IMG/VR virus record: IMGVR_UViG_3300042261_002385 | Location: 186,001 to 250,000 of that record | Length of the DNA: 64,000 nt | Reading direction: 5' to 3' (one strand) | In this document: one piece after another, positions 26 to 6,499 of the stretch | Layout: each line of letters begins with the position of its first letter | Numbering within the stretch: position 1 is the stretch's first letter | Made by a program: the position numbers and the translations under genes | The notes under the pieces: model-generated | Database searches by the model: none | What the model was told of the DNA's origin: nothing | The model's input: only the letters and a program-made list of their open reading frames with translations

Positions 26-811
26 ATGAAGAAAATTATGTTATCTGTTTATAACATACTCAAAGACTTGATTTTTTCTCAGAAGAAAATTGATAAATCA
101 AAACTTCCATCTCAAGGACTTTTTTATAAAGATGACCTTAATATATTTATTAAAAGGGCAAAAGAAGAGGATATAAACGAGTATGAAAGAAATTTCGTAA
201 AGAATAATTTAGGTCTAATAATTCAAAAAGTAAAACAGATAGTTGAAAATAATATTATTTTATCTAAAGGTTATTTATTTGAAGACCTAAAAAGTATAGA
301 CGTTGTTTTCATTTTTCTTGAAATTGTAAAATATACTAAAAACCAAAGCATTGTCATAAATTATGTTGATGAAATTAATAACAAACTAGACGATATTGAG
401 TTTAATCAAACTACATTTAACTATCATAAATTAAGTGACGAAGTTATGAAAAACTATAACCGTGAAGAAAAAAACTTTAAACTTAATGGATACACATACA
501 CATTACCTTCAATTGGAGTAGAAAATAGTTTAACCTTCTTTTTGTTCCACAAATCAACATCACAAGATTCTCACGTTTATCAGAATCTTTTCTATGACTT
601 CACATATTTTGTTGGAGATAAAAACTTTTTGACTTTTCAAGAGATTGAAAATCTGATACAAATTTTCAATCAAGATATTGAAAAAGAAGAATTAGAGAAA
701 GTTAAAAAAACCTTAGAAGTCTTTATTCCGCTACAAAAATATTCTCTAATAAAAGACGGCAAAGAAATAGATATAAATTCTAAAATAGATTTAGAAAATA
801 TCTGGAAATAA
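26..811 (+). CDS. Baseplate hub assembly protein-like (T4 gp26-like), paralog of 49235..50173
   Basis: LPSQGLFY motif parallels LPCGQFYP in 49235..50173; NGYTYTLPSIG parallels NGKFFELTPPNIG; AATATATA at 11-18 upstream. Confidence 0.5.
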   Translation: MKKIMLSVYNILKDLIFSQKKIDKSKLPSQGLFYKDDLNIFIKRAKEEDINEYERNFVKNNLGLIIQKVKQIVENNIILSKGYLFEDLKSIDVVFIFLEIVKYTKNQSIVINYVDEINNKLDDIEFNQTTFNYHKLSDEVMKNYNREEKNFKLNGYTYTLPSIGVENSLTFFLFHKSTSQDSHVYQNLFYDFTYFVGDKNFLTFQEIENLIQIFNQDIEKEELEKVKKTLEVFIPLQKYSLIKDGKEIDINSKIDLENIWK

Positions 812-836
812 AAAAACCTCCCAATATGAGAGGTTT
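809..836 (-). terminator. Intrinsic terminator after the TROVE gene
   Basis: Stem AAACCTC/GAGGTTT next to an A-run (U-tract on the minus strand) between convergent genes. Confidence 0.6.
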
Positions 837-840
837 GAAG

Positions 841-2295
841 TTAAACGAGTGATATAGATTTAATATCATTATATAAAGCCATTTTATCAGTCTCCATAAG
901 TTTCATAATATCAAAAACTTTATCAGAAAAACCAGCTAAACAAAAAACATTACTTTCAGGTAACTGTAAAGTTCCATAACCAGCCAAGTCCCAAGAGTAA
1001 ACAAACGGATTAGCATCAAATCTTTTCTTGTAAGCTTTGAACTCAGAAGAAGGACTAGTATAACCCACCCAACCTTGCATATCACTTAAAATAATAACTC
1101 GGTCATATTTTTTGTTTGCTTTTTGAAAAATTGATTTAAAGTTAGTTCCACCACCAGAATACTTGAAGCTGTTTCTGATAGACATAACAGAATCTAATGG
1201 ATTATATGATTTATAATTAGCATTTGTTGCAAAAGTCATAACATCACAGTTATTAACTTTAGCTAAAATAGCACCAAATAGTGACGCTATTTCAGATGCT
1301 CTACCCATCATAGAACCAGAAACATCCATAACTACTAGTGTTTCACCATCAAATTTAGGAACGTTCTGAACAGAAATTTCCAACGCTTGGTTGATAGCAA
1401 CTAAGACCTCTCTAACTTCTTTTGATTGACCAACTTTTTCAATCTCATCAAAAGCTGTAGTGAAACGAAAAGGTAAAACTCGTGATTTTTTAATTAAATT
1501 CTCATCAACTAACATCTCACAAGCAGCCTTAACAGATTGAGGAGACTGAGTAATTATGTTTCTTAGATTTCTAAGAAGAGCAAAATATCCAATCTTTCTA
1601 GTTTCAATCAACTCAGACCAAGCATTTGATTTTAAATCAGCTAATTCTTCTTCAGACTCAGCAACTTGACCAACTTTAGACAATTTAGCTTCCCAAGTGT
1701 CTGTATTTTTAAGTTCACCTTTAATAAGTAACTCAAGTGCCTCTTTATTTCTAAATGTAGGAACCGGGTGAACTAAATTTACAATATCCACAAGTTTAAC
1801 TTCTTTATTCTCACCTTTATACTTAGCTAATTGATAACCATCAAATTTATCAAAAGCCTTAGCAAATCCTTTTTTCAAAGCATTTGGAAACTTTGGATTG
1901 TCTTTTTCGGTTTTATAAGCCAAATAATAAGAAAGAATTTCGGTCATATCATCAACTCTAACGACAACTTTGTTGTAAAAATCTTTACCCCAATCAGCCC
2001 CAGATAACTGTGAAGTTAATTCAGCGGCTAAAGCGTGAGTCACACTACGCATTCCAAACTTATCACGAGCAAAGATAGCAGATTTAGCGACAAACTCTTT
2101 GTCTTTAACTTTCTCTGATAGTTTTTTCAACTCAACTAAAGTGGATTGAGCACCTCGGTAAAACTGGTCATTAACAAATGATGTTAATAACAAAGATACA
2201 AGAGCCATCTCAGATGACTGTGAGTATGCTTGACCACCAGCTAAGTTTTCAGTTAGTGTTTTTTGTTTTGGCATTGTTGCGTTAAATTTCGACAT
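841..2295 (-). CDS. rsr: Ro60/Rsr-like TROVE domain RNA-binding protein with C-terminal vWA domain
   Basis: N-terminal NLAGGQAY; helical TROVE region (ARDKFGMRS, TWEAKLS, GYFALLRNLRNI, RVLPFRF); vWA MIDAS motif DVSGSM, GGTN and ILSDMQ. Confidence 0.93.
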   Translation of the reverse strand: MSKFNATMPKQKTLTENLAGGQAYSQSSEMALVSLLLTSFVNDQFYRGAQSTLVELKKLSEKVKDKEFVAKSAIFARDKFGMRSVTHALAAELTSQLSGADWGKDFYNKVVVRVDDMTEILSYYLAYKTEKDNPKFPNALKKGFAKAFDKFDGYQLAKYKGENKEVKLVDIVNLVHPVPTFRNKEALELLIKGELKNTDTWEAKLSKVGQVAESEEELADLKSNAWSELIETRKIGYFALLRNLRNIITQSPQSVKAACEMLVDENLIKKSRVLPFRFTTAFDEIEKVGQSKEVREVLVAINQALEISVQNVPKFDGETLVVMDVSGSMMGRASEIASLFGAILAKVNNCDVMTFATNANYKSYNPLDSVMSIRNSFKYSGGGTNFKSIFQKANKKYDRVIILSDMQGWVGYTSPSSEFKAYKKRFDANPFVYSWDLAGYGTLQLPESNVFCLAGFSDKVFDIMKLMETDKMALYNDIKSISLV

Positions 2296-2323
2296 GACTT
2301 TTATTTTTTTTAATTTTTTCTAC

Positions 2324-2364
2324 AAAAAAAAGACCAGACTATCCGAAGATAAATCTGGTCTTTT
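2324..2364 (-). terminator. Intrinsic terminator between the structured RNAs and the TROVE start codon
   Basis: Minus strand AAAAGACCAGATTTATC-TTCG-GATAGTCTGGTC followed by 8 T. Confidence 0.85.
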
Positions 2365-2374
2365 ATATAATGTT

Positions 2375-2600
2375 GCAAACAAGATAATTTAGCCTGAGCG
2401 TTACAAAGAATTCTCCCGAAACTCTGCCGATAGTTGTAGTGACCATCTCACTTAACCCTTTACGTGGAATCATCCGGACTTTTTCACCTCAGCCATCTTT
2501 CAGGACTTGTTGGTAGTCTTAGCTGTCGCCATTAGACACTTTTCGATCGTTCTTAATTGAAATTGTATCTCGAAGTATCTCAAACTATCGCTATGTTTGC
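2375..2600 (-). ncRNA. Ro60-associated structured RNA 1 (Y-RNA-like, about 226 nt)
   Basis: Ends pair (GCAAACA/UGUUUGC; GAU/AUC; AGUUUGAG/CUCAGGCU with two G-U pairs that work only on the minus strand); GC visibly above background; internal hairpins; non-coding; next to TROVE. Confidence 0.72.
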
Positions 2601-2613
2601 TTTTAAACTATAT

Positions 2614-2695
2614 AATTGACCAGAGTAAATTGTCAAAGAGTGTTTTTTCATAATCCAAATTTCGAAGTAACTCTCTAACTCACTACTGGGTAATT
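2614..2695 (-). ncRNA. Ro60-associated structured RNA 2 (about 80 nt), same core fold as RNA 1
   Basis: CCA/UGG, UAGU bulge, GAGU/ACUC, AAUUU bulge, UAGAGAG/CUCUUUG; shares UAGYGA...GAGnUACUUCGA with RNA 1. Confidence 0.7.
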
Positions 2696-2818
2696 GTCAG
2701 TTAAACTTTTATTTCAAAAAATTAAAAAGTTTAAAAGGTTTTAATTTTTTTTCTTAAAAGTATGTTATATATCAACCTTAGAAATTTCGTTTTTTTCGAA
2801 GGTGGATTTTTTATAGCA

Positions 2819-2852
2819 TAAAAAAAGGAGAAAGTTTTAATTTTTCTCCTTT
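2819..2852 (-). terminator. Intrinsic terminator after nrdA
   Basis: Stem AAGGAGAAA/TTTCTCCTT with A-run on the plus strand. Confidence 0.75.
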
Positions 2853-2876
2853 AAGTATTTTTTATTAGAATCCTTA

Positions 2877-5429
2877 TCAGGAACCACATGAGAGGCAATC
2901 CTCTGGTGAATCCAAGCTACACGAGATTTCAGCCATTTGGTCTTCAACTGTTTTAACTTCTTTTTCTTCTTGAATAGTGAACTTAACTGCATCTGATGCA
3001 GATTTGTTTCTTAAGTAATACATACCAGTTTTAAGATTGTTTTTCTTTTCTCTATAGAATCTTGGACTACCGTCTTTATCATAAACAACTTGACAGTTTT
3101 CATCCTGTGGCAAAATTACTTGTCCCATATCATCTTTAAGTAGACTTCTTCTACCCCAACCATAAAAATGCATTGAAGTCAATTTTGCAAAGTTTGGAGA
3201 ATCCATAAAGATATTCATAGACTGTGTTTGGTCAATGAAAGCACCTCTCTCAGCCGCCATATCAATAACGTCTCTTTGTTTAATCTCATAAACTGTTTTG
3301 AAAATTTCCTTTATATTAGTAGGAATCTGTGGAACATTTTGAACTGAACCATTTTCTGAAATAATTCTTTTTCTTAAATTATCATCCCATATACCTAACT
3401 TAACTAATTCTTTCACTAAATATTTGTTAACTAAGATAAAAGTTCCTGATAGAACACCTCTTGTATACATATTTGAAGTTTGAGCCTCACAAGATGCTTC
3501 ATTTCCTAAGATAGAAGCAGTAGATGCCGTTGGCATAATACAAGTCGTAAGTGAGTTTCTAACTCCATATTTTTTAACTTCTTCTCTAAGTTTTTCCCAG
3601 TCCCATCTCTTAGTAGGTTTTGCTCCCCATAAGTCAAATTGAAATTTACCTTCAGACATTGGCGAACCTTTATAAGTAGCATAGTAACCGTCAACTTTAG
3701 CTAAATCACAAGATGCTTTAATCGAAGCGTAATAAATAGTTTCAAAAATCTCTTTATTGATTTGTTTTGCTTCATCTGAATCATAAGGTAATCCTAATAC
3801 GAAAAATACATCAGCTAGACCCTGAACACCTAAACCAACTGGTCTGTGTAATAGATTTGAAAATTTAGCAGCCTTAGAAGGATAGAAATTCACATCAATT
3901 ACATTGTTAAGATTAATAATAGCTTGATAAGCTACTTCATAAAGTTTATTGAAATTATAAGTCTTGTTTTTGTTAACAAATTTAGGAAGAGCTATTGAAG
4001 CTAAGTTACAAACAGCAGTTTCATTAACTGATTCTTCACCAATGAACTCAGATAACCCTAACTTATTTAAAAGTTCTGTGTCCTTTAATACGTCACTTTG
4101 AACTTTAGTAACACCAGTTGCTTCAACAATTTCAGCACAAAGATTAGAACTTCTAACAATTCCAATATTAGATTGATTTGATTTCTCGTTAATTGAATCT
4201 TTATAAAGAATATAAGGAGTTCCTGTTTCGATTTGAGATTCTAAAATTTTATTCCAAACTTCTCTTGCTTTAACAGTTTTTTTAGCTTTTCCTTCACTTT
4301 CATATTTCAAATATAATTGTCTAAATTCATCACCAAAAGTTTCATTAAGACCTTCACACTCGTTTGGACACATTAATGACCAATCCTCATCTAAATCTAC
4401 TCTTTCCATAAATAAATCATTAACCCACATAGCCAAGAAAAGGTCACGTGCTCTGATTTCATCTTTACCTTGATTCTTACGAAGGTCTAAGAACTCCATA
4501 ATATCACCGTGCCAAGGTTCCATATAGATAGCGATTGAACCTTTACGTTTACCACCACCCTGGTCAACCGCTCTTGCAGTTTCGTTGAAGATTTTTAAGA
4601 AAGGAATAATTCCATTTGATGTTCCGTTAGTTCCAGCAATGTAAGTTCCTTTAGCTCTAACTTTATTAAATGAAATACCAATACCACCTGCGTTTTTTGA
4701 AATTTGAGCAGACTCTTTAAGAGTGTTAAAAATTCCTTCAATTGAGTCAGTTTCTGTATCAAGTAAGAAACAAGAAGACAATTGTGGTCTAGTTGTTCCT
4801 GAGTTAAATAATGTAGGAGTAGCGTGTGTATAGTAACCTTCGGAAAGAGTGTTATAGGTTTCAATTACTCTGTCTAAGTTTTCTCCCCAAATTTGAAGAG
4901 CTGTTCTCATATACATATATTGAGGTCTTTCAGCAACTTCACCGTTTATTTTAAGCAAATATGATTTTTCTAATGTTTTATATCCAAAATAATCAAAATT
5001 ATGGTCTCTTGAGTGAACAATTGCAGAATCTAATTCATCAGCATATTTTTTTACTATTTTAAAAAAACTTTCAGAAACAATTGGAGAATGTTTACCTGTT
5101 TTTGGATTTATATAGTTGTAAAGATCTTTAACTGTTTCAGAAAAACTTTTCTTTGTTTCTTTATGTAGTGCAGTAATAGCTAGTCTAGCAGCTAAGACTG
5201 AATAATCCGGATGTTTTGTTGTAAGTGAAGCCGCAGTTTCCATTGCTAATTGGTCTAGTGTAGAAGTCTTGATATCAGGTGTCACACCAGCGATAACTTT
5301 CTGAGCTACATCAAATGGTGATATCCATTTTGAATCTAATCCATAAGTCTGTTGATTTATTCTTTCTAAGATTTTATCCAGCATTACTGGTTCTTTTTTA
5401 CCATTTCTTTTCGTTACTTTAATATTCAT
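2877..5429 (-). CDS. nrdA: Class Ia ribonucleotide reductase large subunit with ATP cone
   Basis: ATP cone (VTKRNG), ATPTLFN, QLSSCF, SNLCAEI, VCNLAS, MPTAST, KTGMYY and C-terminal CLSCGS. Confidence 0.97.
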   Translation of the reverse strand: MNIKVTKRNGKKEPVMLDKILERINQQTYGLDSKWISPFDVAQKVIAGVTPDIKTSTLDQLAMETAASLTTKHPDYSVLAARLAITALHKETKKSFSETVKDLYNYINPKTGKHSPIVSESFFKIVKKYADELDSAIVHSRDHNFDYFGYKTLEKSYLLKINGEVAERPQYMYMRTALQIWGENLDRVIETYNTLSEGYYTHATPTLFNSGTTRPQLSSCFLLDTETDSIEGIFNTLKESAQISKNAGGIGISFNKVRAKGTYIAGTNGTSNGIIPFLKIFNETARAVDQGGGKRKGSIAIYMEPWHGDIMEFLDLRKNQGKDEIRARDLFLAMWVNDLFMERVDLDEDWSLMCPNECEGLNETFGDEFRQLYLKYESEGKAKKTVKAREVWNKILESQIETGTPYILYKDSINEKSNQSNIGIVRSSNLCAEIVEATGVTKVQSDVLKDTELLNKLGLSEFIGEESVNETAVCNLASIALPKFVNKNKTYNFNKLYEVAYQAIINLNNVIDVNFYPSKAAKFSNLLHRPVGLGVQGLADVFFVLGLPYDSDEAKQINKEIFETIYYASIKASCDLAKVDGYYATYKGSPMSEGKFQFDLWGAKPTKRWDWEKLREEVKKYGVRNSLTTCIMPTASTASILGNEASCEAQTSNMYTRGVLSGTFILVNKYLVKELVKLGIWDDNLRKRIISENGSVQNVPQIPTNIKEIFKTVYEIKQRDVIDMAAERGAFIDQTQSMNIFMDSPNFAKLTSMHFYGWGRRSLLKDDMGQVILPQDENCQVVYDKDGSPRFYREKKNNLKTGMYYLRNKSASDAVKFTIQEEKEVKTVEDQMAEISCSLDSPEDCLSCGS

Positions 5430-5545
5430 ATTTGCCTTATAATTTTTTTGTTAGTTATATATTGAACCACTTTTTAAATCAAAATATCAATTTTGAATTT
5501 TTTCGAGGTTTTTTATATCATTATTTTTATTTTTTTCACATTTTT

Positions 5546-6499
5546 TTACAAAAAGTCTATGTTGTTTAATTTATTTAGGTTGTACTTAAATTTAGTATTA
5601 TTTAAAATTTTTGTTATATCTAAAATCTCTACCCAATATATTTTTTCAAATGAATCAACTTTGAAAATTGAGTCTTCATAATTTGTTTCCAATACAACTC
5701 CAGTAATTAATTTATCTTCTTCTAACATATCATCAAACCAAACAAATTCAATTTCAGTTCCTTCGTAGATATTTCTGTTTGTCACATCTTTGGAGTTTTG
5801 GTTTTTACCAATATGATCTTGAAGTTCATTAATTATCAAATTTCTCCAGCTATTATCTAAAAGTTTAAACATATTAAACAGATTATCAGAGAAATAGACC
5901 GCTAATTCATTAAATAATTCGACATTTGTAAAACTTTCATCTTTTAAATTCATTCTTAATAATGAATAATATTGATTAAAATCATTACGAGAAGGTTTTC
6001 TTCTGTTATTTAAGAAATTTATTGTTGTATTTTCTTTTAGGACATCGTAGACTCTCTCTTTTACAAGTTTTGCTCTAATGTAGGATTCATTATCCATAGA
6101 CTCTGTGTGATAAGCTGAAGACTTATCAACTTCAATAGTTTCTTTGAAGTAGTGTGAAAATCCATCTAGTGAGTCTTCATCGACAGGTTCTTCTTTTTTA
6201 CCTTTAAAAATTGAGTCATATTTTAATGAGTGTTTTCCTTCAATTTTATGTTTTGATAAGATAATCTCATCTTCTGAACTTTCTACTTCTGTAGTAGATT
6301 CCGGTTCATCAAGTTTTAAATCATCTTCATCTATTTCGATAATAATTTCTAAATCAGAATCATCATCATCTAATGACAATTCACTATCAGAATCTTCGTC
6401 TTCTGTTTCTTCTACTTCTTCTTGAAATGAATCTGTATCATCATCATTTTCAATGTCGTTTTCAAAGTCGTCATCTTCATCTACTCGCTTCTTAGCCAT
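5546..6499 (-). CDS. Hypothetical protein with highly acidic N-terminus
   Basis: 317-aa ORF in line with the helicase; first ~80 aa very D/E-rich. Confidence 0.75.
   Translation of the reverse strand: MAKKRVDEDDDFENDIENDDDTDSFQEEVEETEDEDSDSELSLDDDDSDLEIIIEIDEDDLKLDEPESTTEVESSEDEIILSKHKIEGKHSLKYDSIFKGKKEEPVDEDSLDGFSHYFKETIEVDKSSAYHTESMDNESYIRAKLVKERVYDVLKENTTINFLNNRRKPSRNDFNQYYSLLRMNLKDESFTNVELFNELAVYFSDNLFNMFKLLDNSWRNLIINELQDHIGKNQNSKDVTNRNIYEGTEIEFVWFDDMLEEDKLITGVVLETNYEDSIFKVDSFEKIYWVEILDITKILNNTKFKYNLNKLNNIDFL

What the first reader, a model, noticed from the sequence alone, without database searches (positions are those of the whole stretch)
2405..2570. RNA 1 carries a ~165-nt multi-hairpin insert that RNA 2 lacks
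Seen: inside the shared stem, RNA 2 has a ~30-nt AU-rich loop, while RNA 1 has a GC-richer domain with hairpins (AGUGA/UCACU, GACU/AGUC, a GGGA-tetraloop hairpin, repeated AAGUCC). Inference: a modular design with a common Ro-binding handle and a variable effector domain, like the PNPase-tethering or tRNA-mimic modules of known Y RNAs.
Basis: inference. Interest (0 to 1): 0.6.

Follow-up and report, generated by a model that had tools for sequence, protein, structure and literature searches.

The report
Huge-phage Y RNA with pseudoknotted domain
Next to the Ro60 gene of a 436-kb freshwater phage lie two Y-type small RNAs with the same presumed Ro-binding stem, and the larger one carries a conserved, pseudoknot-containing 165-nt domain where related phages carry a tRNA mimic, which widens the known range of Y RNA modules.

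Summary
On the minus strand, RNA 1 (window 2600-2374, 227 nt) and RNA 2 (2692-2619, about 72 nt) lie just upstream of a Ro60/TROVE gene (2295-841). They share a two-stem handle around a UAGYGA internal loop. RNA 2 closes it with a 29-nt AU-rich loop. RNA 1 carries a 166-nt insert (2570-2405) of about 44% GC.

The insert is conserved in 44 distinct homologues from related huge phages and folds into five helical elements. These include an H-type pseudoknot and two GNRA-capped hairpins. 95% of cells pair, against 37-43% in slid controls, and 18 pairs change on both sides, against 1-4.

Phages whose Ro is 49-61% identical carry YrlA-like tRNA mimics at the same place. Every locus with Ro at 68% identity or more in which the handle scan found an RNA of more than 80 nt carries the large domain there; a few such loci gave no handle or only a minimal RNA. 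No Rfam family matches it.

Contigs from three metatranscriptome studies lie on RNA 1.

Some reader details fail. The GACU/AGUC hairpin conflicts with covarying pairs, and the AAGUCC repeat is not conserved. AGUGA/UCACU is stem 1 of the pseudoknot.

Ro binding and an effector role are inferred, not shown. This is a new variant of a known kind.

The parts
841..2295 (-). Ro60/TROVE-type RNA-binding protein gene (484 aa)
   Evidence: It hits phrog_850 'RNA-binding protein' at E 2.6e-44 over the full length. It matches Thermus phage phiLo Ro60 (9KOP/9L5Y) at E 2.1e-24 over residues 12-477. It also matches human and Xenopus Ro60 and D. radiodurans Rsr. The NCBIfam Rsr match is only weak, E 4e-5.
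2323..2362 (-). Intrinsic terminator between RNA 1 and the Ro gene (GC stem, UUCG loop, U tract)
   Evidence: The sequence is and the fold. An equivalent hairpin plus U tract is seen in L001, L016 and L018.
2371..2603 (-). RNA 1 with its likely ends. The paired core is 2374-2600 (227 nt).
   Evidence: The handle was found by duplex search. The covariance model hit scores 255.9 bits and is the only one in the 436-kb genome. RNA-library contigs lie at 2388-2600 in X16, X19 and X20. One X16 contig joins 2603 to 2371.
2594..2600 (-). Handle stem 1, 5' strand GCAAACA. It pairs with 2375-2381.
   Evidence: 100% of cells pair, and 3 of 7 pairs change on both sides in A4.
2375..2381 (-). Handle stem 1, 3' strand UGUUUGC
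   Evidence: helix 1.
2588..2593 (-). Internal-loop motif UAGCGA, the clade's version of the YrlA GNCGAA motif and the presumed Ro contact. It faces AAUUAUCU at 2382-2389.
   Evidence: The consensus is U(109/112) A(103) G(112) Y(112) R(112) A(112). The motif's meaning is taken from PMC4201824.
2579..2587 (-). Handle stem 2, 5' strand UAGUUUGAG. It pairs with 2390-2398 (CUCAGGCUA).
   Evidence: 99% of cells pair (helix 2). The U.G pairs fix the minus strand as the RNA strand.
2570..2578 (-). Conserved AUACUUCGA at the top of the handle, shared with RNA 2 as UUACUUCGA
   Evidence: G(U/A)UACUUC occurs in all 112 RNAs.
2405..2570 (-).
2516..2537 (-). P-B hairpin: GUCU/AGAC, then UGGC/GCUA, capped by GACA
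   Evidence: The basal pairs covary: UCU/AGA, AU/AU, UC/GA, CU/GG, CU/AG, AC/GU and UU/AA, read. The GC/GC closing pairs are invariant.
2485..2515 (-). P-C: UACC/GGUG enclosing a hypervariable distal hairpin (AGUC/GGCU, 2507-2491)
   Evidence: The pair at 2512/2488 is C-G in 25 sequences and U-A in 19. The distal segment folds better than its own shuffles in 44 of 44 homologues.
2475..2484 (-). Conserved, apparently single-stranded junction AAAAAGUCCG
   Evidence: It is nearly invariant in 44 sequences. No partner was found.
2453..2472 (-). P-D hairpin: UGAU(U)CC/GGGUUA with loop ACGUAAA
   Evidence: The stem sequence changes completely between homologues: UGAC/GUCA, UGAUU/AAUCA, UGACUC/GAGUCA, GUCUUC/GGAGAC. 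In A3, 3 of 6 pairs change on both sides. Long forms insert further helices here.
2429..2452 (-). H-type pseudoknot. S1 is AGUG(2452-2449)/CACU(2441-2438). S2 is GAUGGU(2447-2442)/ACUAUC(2434-2429). L1 is 1 nt and L3 is ACA.
   Evidence: S1 is 98% paired, with A-U in 27, C-G in 11 and G-U in 6 sequences at its first pair. S2 shows G-C 20, U-A 12 and A-U 1 at its outer pair, and U-A 39 and C-G 5 at its third pair. In 6 sequences the cell of the usual G.U pair (2444/2432) is unpaired; in three of them (L009, L017, L047) I read it by eye as A.C. The outer two S2 pairs are lost in an 11-sequence subclade.
2403..2427 (-). P-F hairpin: GCAGAG/CUUUGU, then UUC/GAA, capped by GGGA (a GNRA loop)
   Evidence: 99% of cells pair, and 3 pairs change on both sides (GCGAAG/CUUCGU, AUAGAG/CUCUAU). 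The loop becomes GACA or UCAC in some homologues.
2619..2692 (-). RNA 2: a minimal Y RNA with the same handle and a 29-nt AU-rich apical loop
   Evidence: 12 of 18 predicted pairs have compensatory changes in 33 homologues. Model R1 hits it through the handle alone, at 26.4 bits.
2771..2807 (-). Conserved inverted repeat upstream of RNA 2, possibly a promoter or operator for the RNA 2 - RNA 1 unit
   Evidence: It is 82-98% identical in 19 loci. It has only one compensatory pair, so an RNA structure is not shown.

Best explanation
RNA 1 is a phage-encoded Y RNA, the non-coding partner of the Ro60 protein encoded directly downstream.

Its two ends pair into a bipartite stem around a conserved asymmetric internal loop, UAGCGA against AAUUAUCU. 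This stem is the Ro-binding handle, and RNA 2 shares it.

Inside the handle, RNA 1 carries a 166-nt domain that folds on its own. It consists of a GACA-capped hairpin (P-B), a helix with a hypervariable tip (P-C), a hairpin (P-D) that abuts a compact H-type pseudoknot, and a GGGA-capped hairpin (P-F).

This domain sits exactly where related phage Y RNAs carry a tRNA-like domain.

I infer two roles for it. First, it is the module that gives the Ro ribonucleoprotein its specificity by docking a partner. The likeliest partner is a 3'-5' exoribonuclease, as in the Ro-Y RNA-PNPase machine. The host PNPase and the phage's own RNase II/R-family enzyme are both candidates. Second, its compact fold makes the RNA stable.

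Shown here: the anatomy, conservation, covariation, linkage to Ro, replacement of the tRNA-like module, and presence in RNA libraries.

Inferred: Ro binding, tethering, and the identity of the partner.
For: - Ro identity of the neighbouring gene.
- The handle is shared by 112 distinct RNAs upstream of Ro homologues that are 49-100% identical.
- Linkage holds in both directions. Ro-based retrieval finds the RNAs. A scan with the P-F motif finds 10 viral contigs, 9 of which have Ro directly downstream.
- The RNA is single-copy in the genome.
- Structure on 44 sequences: 94.9% of cells pair, against 37-43% when partners are slid. 18 pairs change on both sides, against 1-4. No shuffle of 500 reaches the observed values. 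The 11 short forms give the same picture.
- Insertions in homologues arrive as whole helices, including a second pseudoknot whose 3 pairs all covary.
- G.U pairs and the terminator fix the strand.
- Module type tracks the Ro clade, and the distant clade gives YrlA hits.
- RNA-library contigs from three studies lie within 2388-2600. Their contig depths are 54-161, against 2-3 for contigs on the Ro gene in the same run. A head-to-tail joint sits at 2603/2371.
- A phage Ro60 with two upstream Y-like RNAs that assembles with host PNPase has precedent (PMC12135203).
- The phage encodes an RNase II/R-family enzyme, 488.6 bits, above the cut-off.
Against: - No experiment links this RNA to this Ro.
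- The strict YrlA motif GNCGAAN0-1G is absent from all 112 RNAs.
- Rfam YrlA does not match RNA 1 even at E up to 10.
- Single-sequence folding energy is no better than shuffles for the insert.
- The RNase II/R gene is missing from two near-complete relatives that do have Ro and RNA 1, and it is present in a megaphage whose Ro status I did not check. Co-occurrence therefore does not single it out.
- Depths come from assembled contigs, and the tool warns that these cannot rank expression.
Confidence: 0.8

Rival explanations
1. The domain has no partner of its own. It is only a nuclease-resistant plug: compact helices plus a pseudoknot that protect the Y RNA from exonucleases. This is one of the roles Chen et al. 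proposed for the tRNA-like fold.
For: - A compact pseudoknot and GNRA-capped hairpins are present.
- RNA 1 contigs stand out in RNA libraries while RNA 2 is barely seen.
- The stability hypothesis appears in PMC4201824.
Against: Several unpaired stretches are nearly invariant over 44 sequences: AAAAAGUCCG, the loop of P-B, and ACGUAAA-type loops. A mere plug would not need this. RNA 2 persists in evolution without any such domain.
Confidence: 0.25
2. RNA 1 is mainly a cis-acting leader of the Ro mRNA. It would be a structured 5' region whose fold controls read-through of the terminator at 2362-2323, rather than a trans-acting Y RNA.
For: It lies directly upstream of Ro on the same strand, with an intrinsic terminator in between. 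Contigs on Ro are far shallower than contigs on RNA 1.
Against: - The RNA closes on itself through a handle identical in design to that of RNA 2 and of the tRNA-like Y RNAs.
- I saw no alternative pairing between the domain and the terminator.
- The head-to-tail joint places a 3' end at about 2371, upstream of the terminator.
Confidence: 0.1
3. RNA 1 exists as a circular RNA, with its 3' end joined to its 5' end across the handle, and the circle is the functional form.
For: One contig in metatranscriptome X16 joins 2603 back to 2371 with one extra letter, at depth 14.8. No RNA 1 - RNA 1 tandem was seen in the loci examined.
Against: - It is a single contig in a single run.
- The extra letter is a C on the cDNA-sense strand, placed exactly where reverse transcriptase adds untemplated C before switching to a second copy of an abundant template. 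This reading rests on my knowledge of RT behaviour.
- No RtcB-type ligase was detected in the phage genome.
- 2603 lies 4 nt downstream of the end (2607) of a -10-like TATAGT hexamer, which could make it a primary, triphosphorylated 5' end; but its -35 (TTGACA) is not conserved in relatives.
Confidence: 0.07
4. The domain is a degenerate tRNA mimic, a much-expanded descendant of the YrlA T-arm and D-arm module that still presents a tRNA-like surface.
For: It occupies the same position as the tRNA-like module of relatives. The hairpin AGUG-AGAUGGU-CACU resembles a D-arm, with A, G ... GG in a 7-nt loop.
Against: - The loop nucleotides of that hairpin pair with downstream ACUAUC, with covariation, so it is a pseudoknot and not a free D-loop.
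- The GG becomes AG in several homologues.
- There is no T-loop sequence.
- ARAGORN and the Rfam YrlA and tRNA models find nothing.
Confidence: 0.08

Closest known systems
YrlA (Rfam RF02553), the bacterial and phage Y RNA-like RNAs of Chen et al. 2014
   Same: Both are encoded next to a Ro60 orthologue. In both, the 5' and 3' ends pair into a stem with a conserved purine-rich motif on the 5' strand containing a (C/U)GA core. Both are modular, with an internal domain between the stem strands. Both occur in clusters of 2-5 RNAs.
   Different: There is no T-arm, D-arm or acceptor-like module. The domain is 166 nt here (about 150-260 nt in homologues), with a pseudoknot and GNRA hairpins. The strict GNCGAAN0-1G motif is not met (UAGCGAU here). 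The Rfam model gives no hit at E up to 10.
YrlB / Yrn2-type minimal Y RNAs (S. Typhimurium, M. smegmatis, D. radiodurans)
   Same: [quoted passage not shown]
   Different: RNA 2's loop is A-rich rather than pyrimidine-rich. RNA 1 is not of this type.
D. radiodurans Yrn1 in the Ro-Y RNA-PNPase (RYPER) machine
   Same: It supplies the working model used here: the stem binds Ro, and the distal module contacts the S1/KH domains of a 3'-5' exoribonuclease.
   Different: There is no sequence or structural similarity of the module. The phage has no PNPase gene, only S1-like hits, but it does have an RNase II/R-family gene. The partner is unknown.
Thermus phage phiLo Ro60 with Yrl1 and Yrl2 (PMC12135203)
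   Same: It is the closest solved protein relative of this Ro, at E 2e-24. It also has two Y-like RNAs directly upstream of the phage Ro gene, and it was reported to assemble with host PNPase.
   Different: The phiLo RNAs were described as simple stem-bulge-stem RNAs with a CGAA motif. No large structured domain was reported.
Metazoan Y RNAs (hY1, hY3-5)
   Same: They share the terminal stem with a bulged Ro site and a variable internal loop or module. They are short RNAs that occur in several paralogues.
   Different: The GGUCCGA/UUGAC helix is not present. Metazoan modules are loose loops of 20-60 nt, not pseudoknotted domains.

Membership tests
Y RNA (Ro60-associated ncRNA, broad sense) | Encoded close to, or co-occurring with, a Ro60/TROVE gene | tested here: met
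   RNA 1 ends 78 nt upstream of the Ro start. Linkage was seen in every locus where the RNAs were found, and in 9 of 10 RNA-based hits.
Y RNA (Ro60-associated ncRNA, broad sense) | 5' and 3' ends pair into a long stem interrupted by a conserved bulge or internal loop that serves as the Ro site | tested here: met
   The stem 1 / UAGYRA loop / stem 2 layout is shared by 112 RNAs. The stems covary while the loop sequence stays constant.
Y RNA (Ro60-associated ncRNA, broad sense) | Physical binding to Ro60 | not testable with these tools
   This needs co-purification or EMSA.
YrlA (Rfam RF02553) | GNCGAAN0-1G motif near the 5' end | tested here: not met
   The strict pattern matches 0 of 112 RNAs. 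RNA 1 has AGCGAUAG and RNA 2 has AGUGAGUU.
YrlA (Rfam RF02553) | tRNA-like domain (T-arm, D-arm, acceptor-like stem) | tested here: not met
   There is no T-loop or D-arm by pattern and no tRNA by ARAGORN. The D-arm-like hairpin is part of a pseudoknot.
YrlA (Rfam RF02553) | Match to the Rfam covariance model | tested here: not met
   There is no hit at E up to 10 on 2200-2950 and none at E up to 0.5 in the window. No hit falls on RNA 1 of the relatives. The tRNA-like relatives score 33-44 bits, below the gathering score of 69.
H-type RNA pseudoknot (structural motif) | Loop nucleotides of a hairpin pair with a downstream strand, both stems are supported, and the loop lengths are sterically possible | tested here: met
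   S1 is 98% paired with 2 pairs changing on both sides. S2 is 84% paired with 3 such pairs. L1 is 1 nt across a 6-bp S2, and L3 is 3 nt across a 4-bp S1. The steric judgement rests on general knowledge of pseudoknot geometry.
Any curated RNA family (Rfam 15) | Score at or near a family's gathering threshold | tested here: not met
   There are 0 matches at gathering. Only terminator look-alikes appear at permissive E.

The most novel reading that the evidence does not exclude
The pseudoknotted domain is a previously undescribed class of Y RNA effector module. On this reading it evolved in a clade of freshwater huge phages to replace tRNA mimicry. It would recruit a specific nuclease, for example the phage's own RNase II/R-type enzyme, to phage Ro60. 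The result would be a phage-built RNA-degradation or RNA-surveillance machine used in host takeover or counter-defence. The RNA would be abundant enough to be one of the visible unknown RNAs of lake metatranscriptomes.
Probability: 0.2. Interest if true: 0.8.

Novelty: new variant of a known kind. Interest (0 to 1): 0.6.

Why it matters
Ro60 with Y RNAs is a conserved RNA-surveillance system whose specificity is thought to lie in the Y RNA module. Only a few module types are known: loose loops in animals, the PNPase-contacting end of Yrn1, and tRNA mimics in YrlA.

Chen et al. [quoted passage not shown] This clade of huge phages, with records of up to 634 kb, is an exception. A larger, pseudoknotted, strongly conserved domain stands where the tRNA mimic would be, and in this phage's 436-kb record the handle scan found only RNA 1 and RNA 2.

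This yields a concrete, expressible RNA-protein pair: RNA 1, RNA 2 and a 484-aa Ro. With it one can ask what a Y RNA module recognises and why phages carry Ro. It also yields a covariance model for annotating the RNA in freshwater viromes.

Tried and rejected
- **Rfam.** Searches at gathering and at permissive E-values, on the window and on relatives, found nothing on RNA 1.
- **ARAGORN.** It found no tRNA or tmRNA in the window or in the RNA regions.
- **Single-sequence MFE.** It is not informative: z = -0.52 for the insert. The MFE fold disagrees with the comparative structure.
I rejected it because AGAC pairs with GUCU (P-B) and UACC pairs with GGUG (P-C), both with covariation.
- **My own 3-bp GUC/GGC helix.** I dropped it because its apparent covariation is explained by the first pairs of P-F.
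- **Pairing of the 5' handle (CGAUAGUU) with AACUAUCG.** It is strong in the window but not kept in L008, L060 or L074-type homologues. That stretch is instead stem 2 of the pseudoknot.
- **The D-arm reading of AGUG-AGAUGGU-CACU.** I rejected it for the same reason.
- **Similarity to 16S rRNA** (GUGAGAUG..., GGGUUAAGU). The GGGUUA part is a variable stem strand, so I treat the resemblance as chance. The 16S sequence was recalled from memory.
- **Antisense targets in the phage genome.** Only scattered 11-13-mers turned up, as expected by chance.
- **RtcB ligase.** None was found, and a motif regex also found none.
- **PNPase.** Only S1-like fragments were found.
- **RNase II/R co-occurrence with Ro.** It is not strict.
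- **The predicted sigma-70 promoter of RNA 1.** Its -35 (TTGACA, 2636-2631) lies in RNA 2's stem and varies with that stem in relatives. RNA 1 may instead be processed from an RNA 2 - RNA 1 precursor. One RNA-library contig spans 2570-2677.
- **The upstream inverted repeat.** Its sequence is conserved but only one pair is compensatory, so an RNA structure is not shown.
- **Complex prediction and protein folds.** I ran none, because no protein-protein claim is made.

Full report
**Setting.** The window is bases 186001-250000 of a 436,265-bp virus record, estimated 95% complete and 31.5% GC, with 28 tRNA genes elsewhere. Its nearest named relatives in GenBank are the uncultured megaphages LR745206 (634 kb) and LR756502 (642 kb). 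At least 14 DNA runs from freshwater, lake and drinking-water studies hold most of the stretch.

The genes around the finding are all on the minus strand. They are, in order: a ribonucleotide reductase alpha gene (5429..2877), its terminator, a 581-nt intergenic region, and a 484-aa ORF (2295..841). That ORF is a Ro60 homologue. It hits phrog_850 at E 2.6e-44. It aligns over its full length to the crystal structure of Thermus phage phiLo Ro60 at E 2.1e-24. It also matches human and Xenopus Ro60 and Deinococcus Rsr.

**The observation.** Read on the minus strand, the intergenic region holds two RNAs of one design.

- RNA 1 (2600..2374) has stem 1 GCAAACA/UGUUUGC. Its internal loop is UAGCGA against AAUUAUCU. 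Stem 2 is UAGUUUGAG/CUCAGGCUA, followed by AUACUUCGA.
- RNA 2 (about 2692..2619) has CCCAG/CUGG. Its internal loop is UAGUGA against AAUUUACU. Stem 2 is GUUAGAGAG/CUCUUUGAC, followed by UUACUUCGA.

RNA 2 closes with 29 nt that are 76% A+U. RNA 1 instead holds 2570..2405, at 44-45% GC in a region otherwise at 17-30%. An intrinsic terminator (2362-2323) follows RNA 1.

**Is it more than chance?** Folding energy alone does not say so. The insert has z = -0.52 and the whole RNA has z = -1.95. The comparative data decide the matter.

The Ro protein retrieved 29 viral and 80 metagenomic loci. A scan for the handle found 173 RNAs upstream of these Ro genes, of which 112 are distinct. All share U-A-G-Y-R-A after stem 1 and G(U/A)UACUUC after stem 2.

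Forty-seven distinct RNA 1 homologues of 215-321 nt were found. Forty-four of them align over the whole length.

**Structure of the domain.** I read helices from the alignments and then tested them.

- On 11 short forms, 95.6% of cells pair, against 33-43% when the 3' partners are slid by 1-3 columns. Thirteen pairs change on both sides, against 0-4. None of 500 shuffles reaches the observed values.
- On 44 sequences, 94.9% of cells pair, against 37-43%. Eighteen pairs change on both sides, against 1-4. Again 0 of 500 shuffles reach the observed values.

The elements are as follows.

- **P-B (2537-2516).** A hairpin with a GACA cap.
- **P-C (2515-2485).** Its basal pair switches from C-G to U-A in 19 sequences. 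Its tip is a hairpin of unrelated sequence in each lineage, and it is better than shuffles in 44 of 44.
- **Junction AAAAAGUCCG.** It is nearly invariant and apparently unpaired.
- **P-D (2472-2453).** Its stem sequence is replaced wholesale between lineages.
- **H-type pseudoknot (2452-2429).** The loop of the AGUG/CACU hairpin pairs with ACUAUC three nucleotides downstream. Both stems covary. In 6 sequences the cell of the usual G.U pair of stem 2 is unpaired; in three of them I read it by eye as A.C.
- **P-F (2427-2403).** It has a GGGA cap.

P-D abuts stem 1 of the pseudoknot, and stem 2 lies one nucleotide from P-F, so coaxial stacking is likely. That last point is inference.

Longer homologues differ by insertion of whole helices. 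One insertion is a second pseudoknot: an AAGGAA/UUCCUU stem whose loop pairs with the three nucleotides before the first pseudoknot. All three of those pairs covary and 99% of cells pair.

Frequent U.G and G.U pairs would be A.C on the other strand. This fixes the minus strand as the RNA strand.

GACU/AGUC cannot form alongside P-B and P-C. The two AAGUCC copies are unrelated: one lies in the hypervariable tip and one in the conserved junction. AGUGA/UCACU is not a plain hairpin.

**Modularity.** Sorting loci by Ro identity gives a clean split. Every locus with Ro at 68% identity or more in which an RNA of more than 80 nt was found has one large non-tRNA RNA. Usually there is also one minimal RNA of 64-78 nt. 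In L083-L085 the scan found no handle, and the covariance model found no RNA 1 in them either.

Almost every locus with Ro at 49-61% identity has at least one RNA of 116-159 nt with a GGUUCGAAUCC-type T-arm and an AGCUCAG...GAGC D-arm. The one exception, L030 at 53%, showed only a minimal RNA. These tRNA-like RNAs are often accompanied by minimal RNAs in tandem. They hit Rfam YrlA at 33-44 bits, E 1e-6 to 2e-3, below the gathering score. RNA 1 and its homologues give no YrlA hit at all.

The large domain thus stands where the tRNA mimic stands in the sister clade.

Linkage also holds when approached from the RNA side. A scan for the P-F motif found 10 viral contigs. Nine have Ro directly downstream, and the tenth is cut by the end of the stored piece.

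A covariance model built from the short forms finds one copy in the whole phage genome, at 255.9 bits. It also finds further homologues that the pattern scan had missed.

**Expression.** Contigs of four RNA libraries were laid on 800-6000. In three of them, from three studies, contigs lie on RNA 1: X16 at 2388-2591, X19 at 2394-2677 and X20 at 2398-2600. None of the contigs listed by the tool runs past 2600 except one X19 contig (2570-2677), which bridges into RNA 2; 68 further contigs were not listed.

In X16 the RNA 1 contigs have word depths of 54-161, against 2-3 for contigs on the Ro and reductase genes. The tool warns that contig depth cannot rank expression. I therefore take this only as evidence that the RNA is present well above any DNA background.

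Loose ends at 2453 and 2462 continue into the P-D and insertion hairpins of relatives, so homologues appear in the RNA libraries too.

One X16 contig joins 2603 back to 2371 with one extra C on the plus strand. A reverse transcriptase reaching the 5' end of an abundant RNA adds untemplated C and can jump to the 3' end of another copy. That would give exactly this sequence, so I read the joint as marking the RNA's ends (233 nt). This reading rests on my own knowledge of RT behaviour. A circular RNA is a less likely alternative. No RtcB-type ligase is encoded.

**Mechanism.** The steps shown here are the design, conservation, linkage and presence as RNA described above. The inferred steps follow.

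The UAGCGA loop corresponds in position to the GNCGAA motif, which Chen et al. relate to the GGUCCGA contacted by Xenopus Ro60 (PMC4201824). The handle should therefore seat the RNA on Ro.

By analogy with Yrn1-PNPase and with the phiLo Ro60-Yrl-PNPase complexes (PMC12135203), the domain should dock a partner. The phage has no PNPase. It does encode an RNase II/R-family exoribonuclease outside the window, at 488.6 bits. That gene is present in three of five relatives' records and absent from two near-complete ones, so it is only a candidate.

The invariant single-stranded stretches argue for a specific partner rather than a mere protective fold.

**Comparison and novelty.** Ro plus Y-like RNAs in phages is known: 22 phages in Chen et al. 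2014, jumbo phages in PMC7824862, and phiLo. A Y RNA in which a conserved, pseudoknotted domain of 166-260 nt stands in place of the tRNA mimic did not turn up in my literature searches, and none is in Rfam.

RNA 1 fails the defining tests of YrlA (motif, tRNA-like domain, model match). It passes the broader Y RNA tests that can be run in silico. I class it as a new variant of a known kind.

Ro relatives at 53-61% identity occur mostly in Bacteroidota MAGs. This hints at the host range of the wider group.

Noticed in passing
window 2603 / 2371 (minus-strand RNA 1 ends): One metatranscriptome contig (X16, depth 14.8) joins 2603 back to 2371 with one extra C. This is a head-to-tail junction of RNA 1. 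It could reflect reverse-transcriptase template switching between copies, a circular RNA, or a tandem copy in an unseen relative.
   Followed up: partly
window 2771-2807 (minus strand), core of a conserved block at about 2745-2820: A 9-bp inverted repeat (AUCCACCUU ... AAGGUUGAU) encloses UUCG-A7-CGAA. It is 82-98% identical in 19 related loci but has only one compensatory pair. It looks more like a promoter or operator for the RNA 2 - RNA 1 unit than an RNA structure.
   Followed up: partly
window 2693-2745: A stretch of about 60 nt, very AT-rich (GC 0.17-0.23), lies between the conserved block and RNA 2. It is absent from LR745206.
   Followed up: no
G000:C1:272052-273839 (+), outside the window: The phage encodes a 643-aa RNase II/R-family 3'-5' exoribonuclease (TIGR00358, 488.6 bits, above the cut-off). 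It is also present in three related huge-phage records and in LR756502, and absent from two near-complete relatives.
   Followed up: partly
L027:2966-3670 (likewise L028, L032, L097): In these relatives the Ro gene is split after about residue 160 by an insert of about 700 nt that encodes a 231-aa HNH homing endonuclease (phrog_8446, E 7e-21). It may be an intron or a free-standing mobile insertion.
   Followed up: partly
L001:4443-5017 compared with window 2296-2876: In LR745206 the Ro-RNA unit is not next to the ribonucleotide reductase gene. The RNAs stay with Ro, not with the upstream neighbour.
   Followed up: no
L001, L065 and L109, within RNA 1 (between AUACUUCGA and P-B): These homologues carry a lineage-specific extra hairpin, UUGUUGGUACUUUCGGGUUCCACCAA, with a UUCG-type loop.
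   Followed up: no
L020, L022, L088, L089, L031 (upstream of Ro): Distant relatives carry 3-5 Y-like RNAs in tandem, only 4-10 nt apart, mixing tRNA-like and minimal forms. This suggests processing from one precursor.
   Followed up: no
G000:C1:36956-75560 and 162091-162162, outside the window: ARAGORN finds 28 tRNA genes, one with a 4-base anticodon call, mostly in clusters far from the Ro locus.
   Followed up: no
window 2636-2607 (minus strand): A sigma-70-like promoter (TTGACA-18-TATAGT, 11 of 12 matches) lies before RNA 1. Its -35 is the 3' strand of RNA 2's stem 2 and varies with that stem in relatives, so it may not be a conserved promoter.
   Followed up: partly
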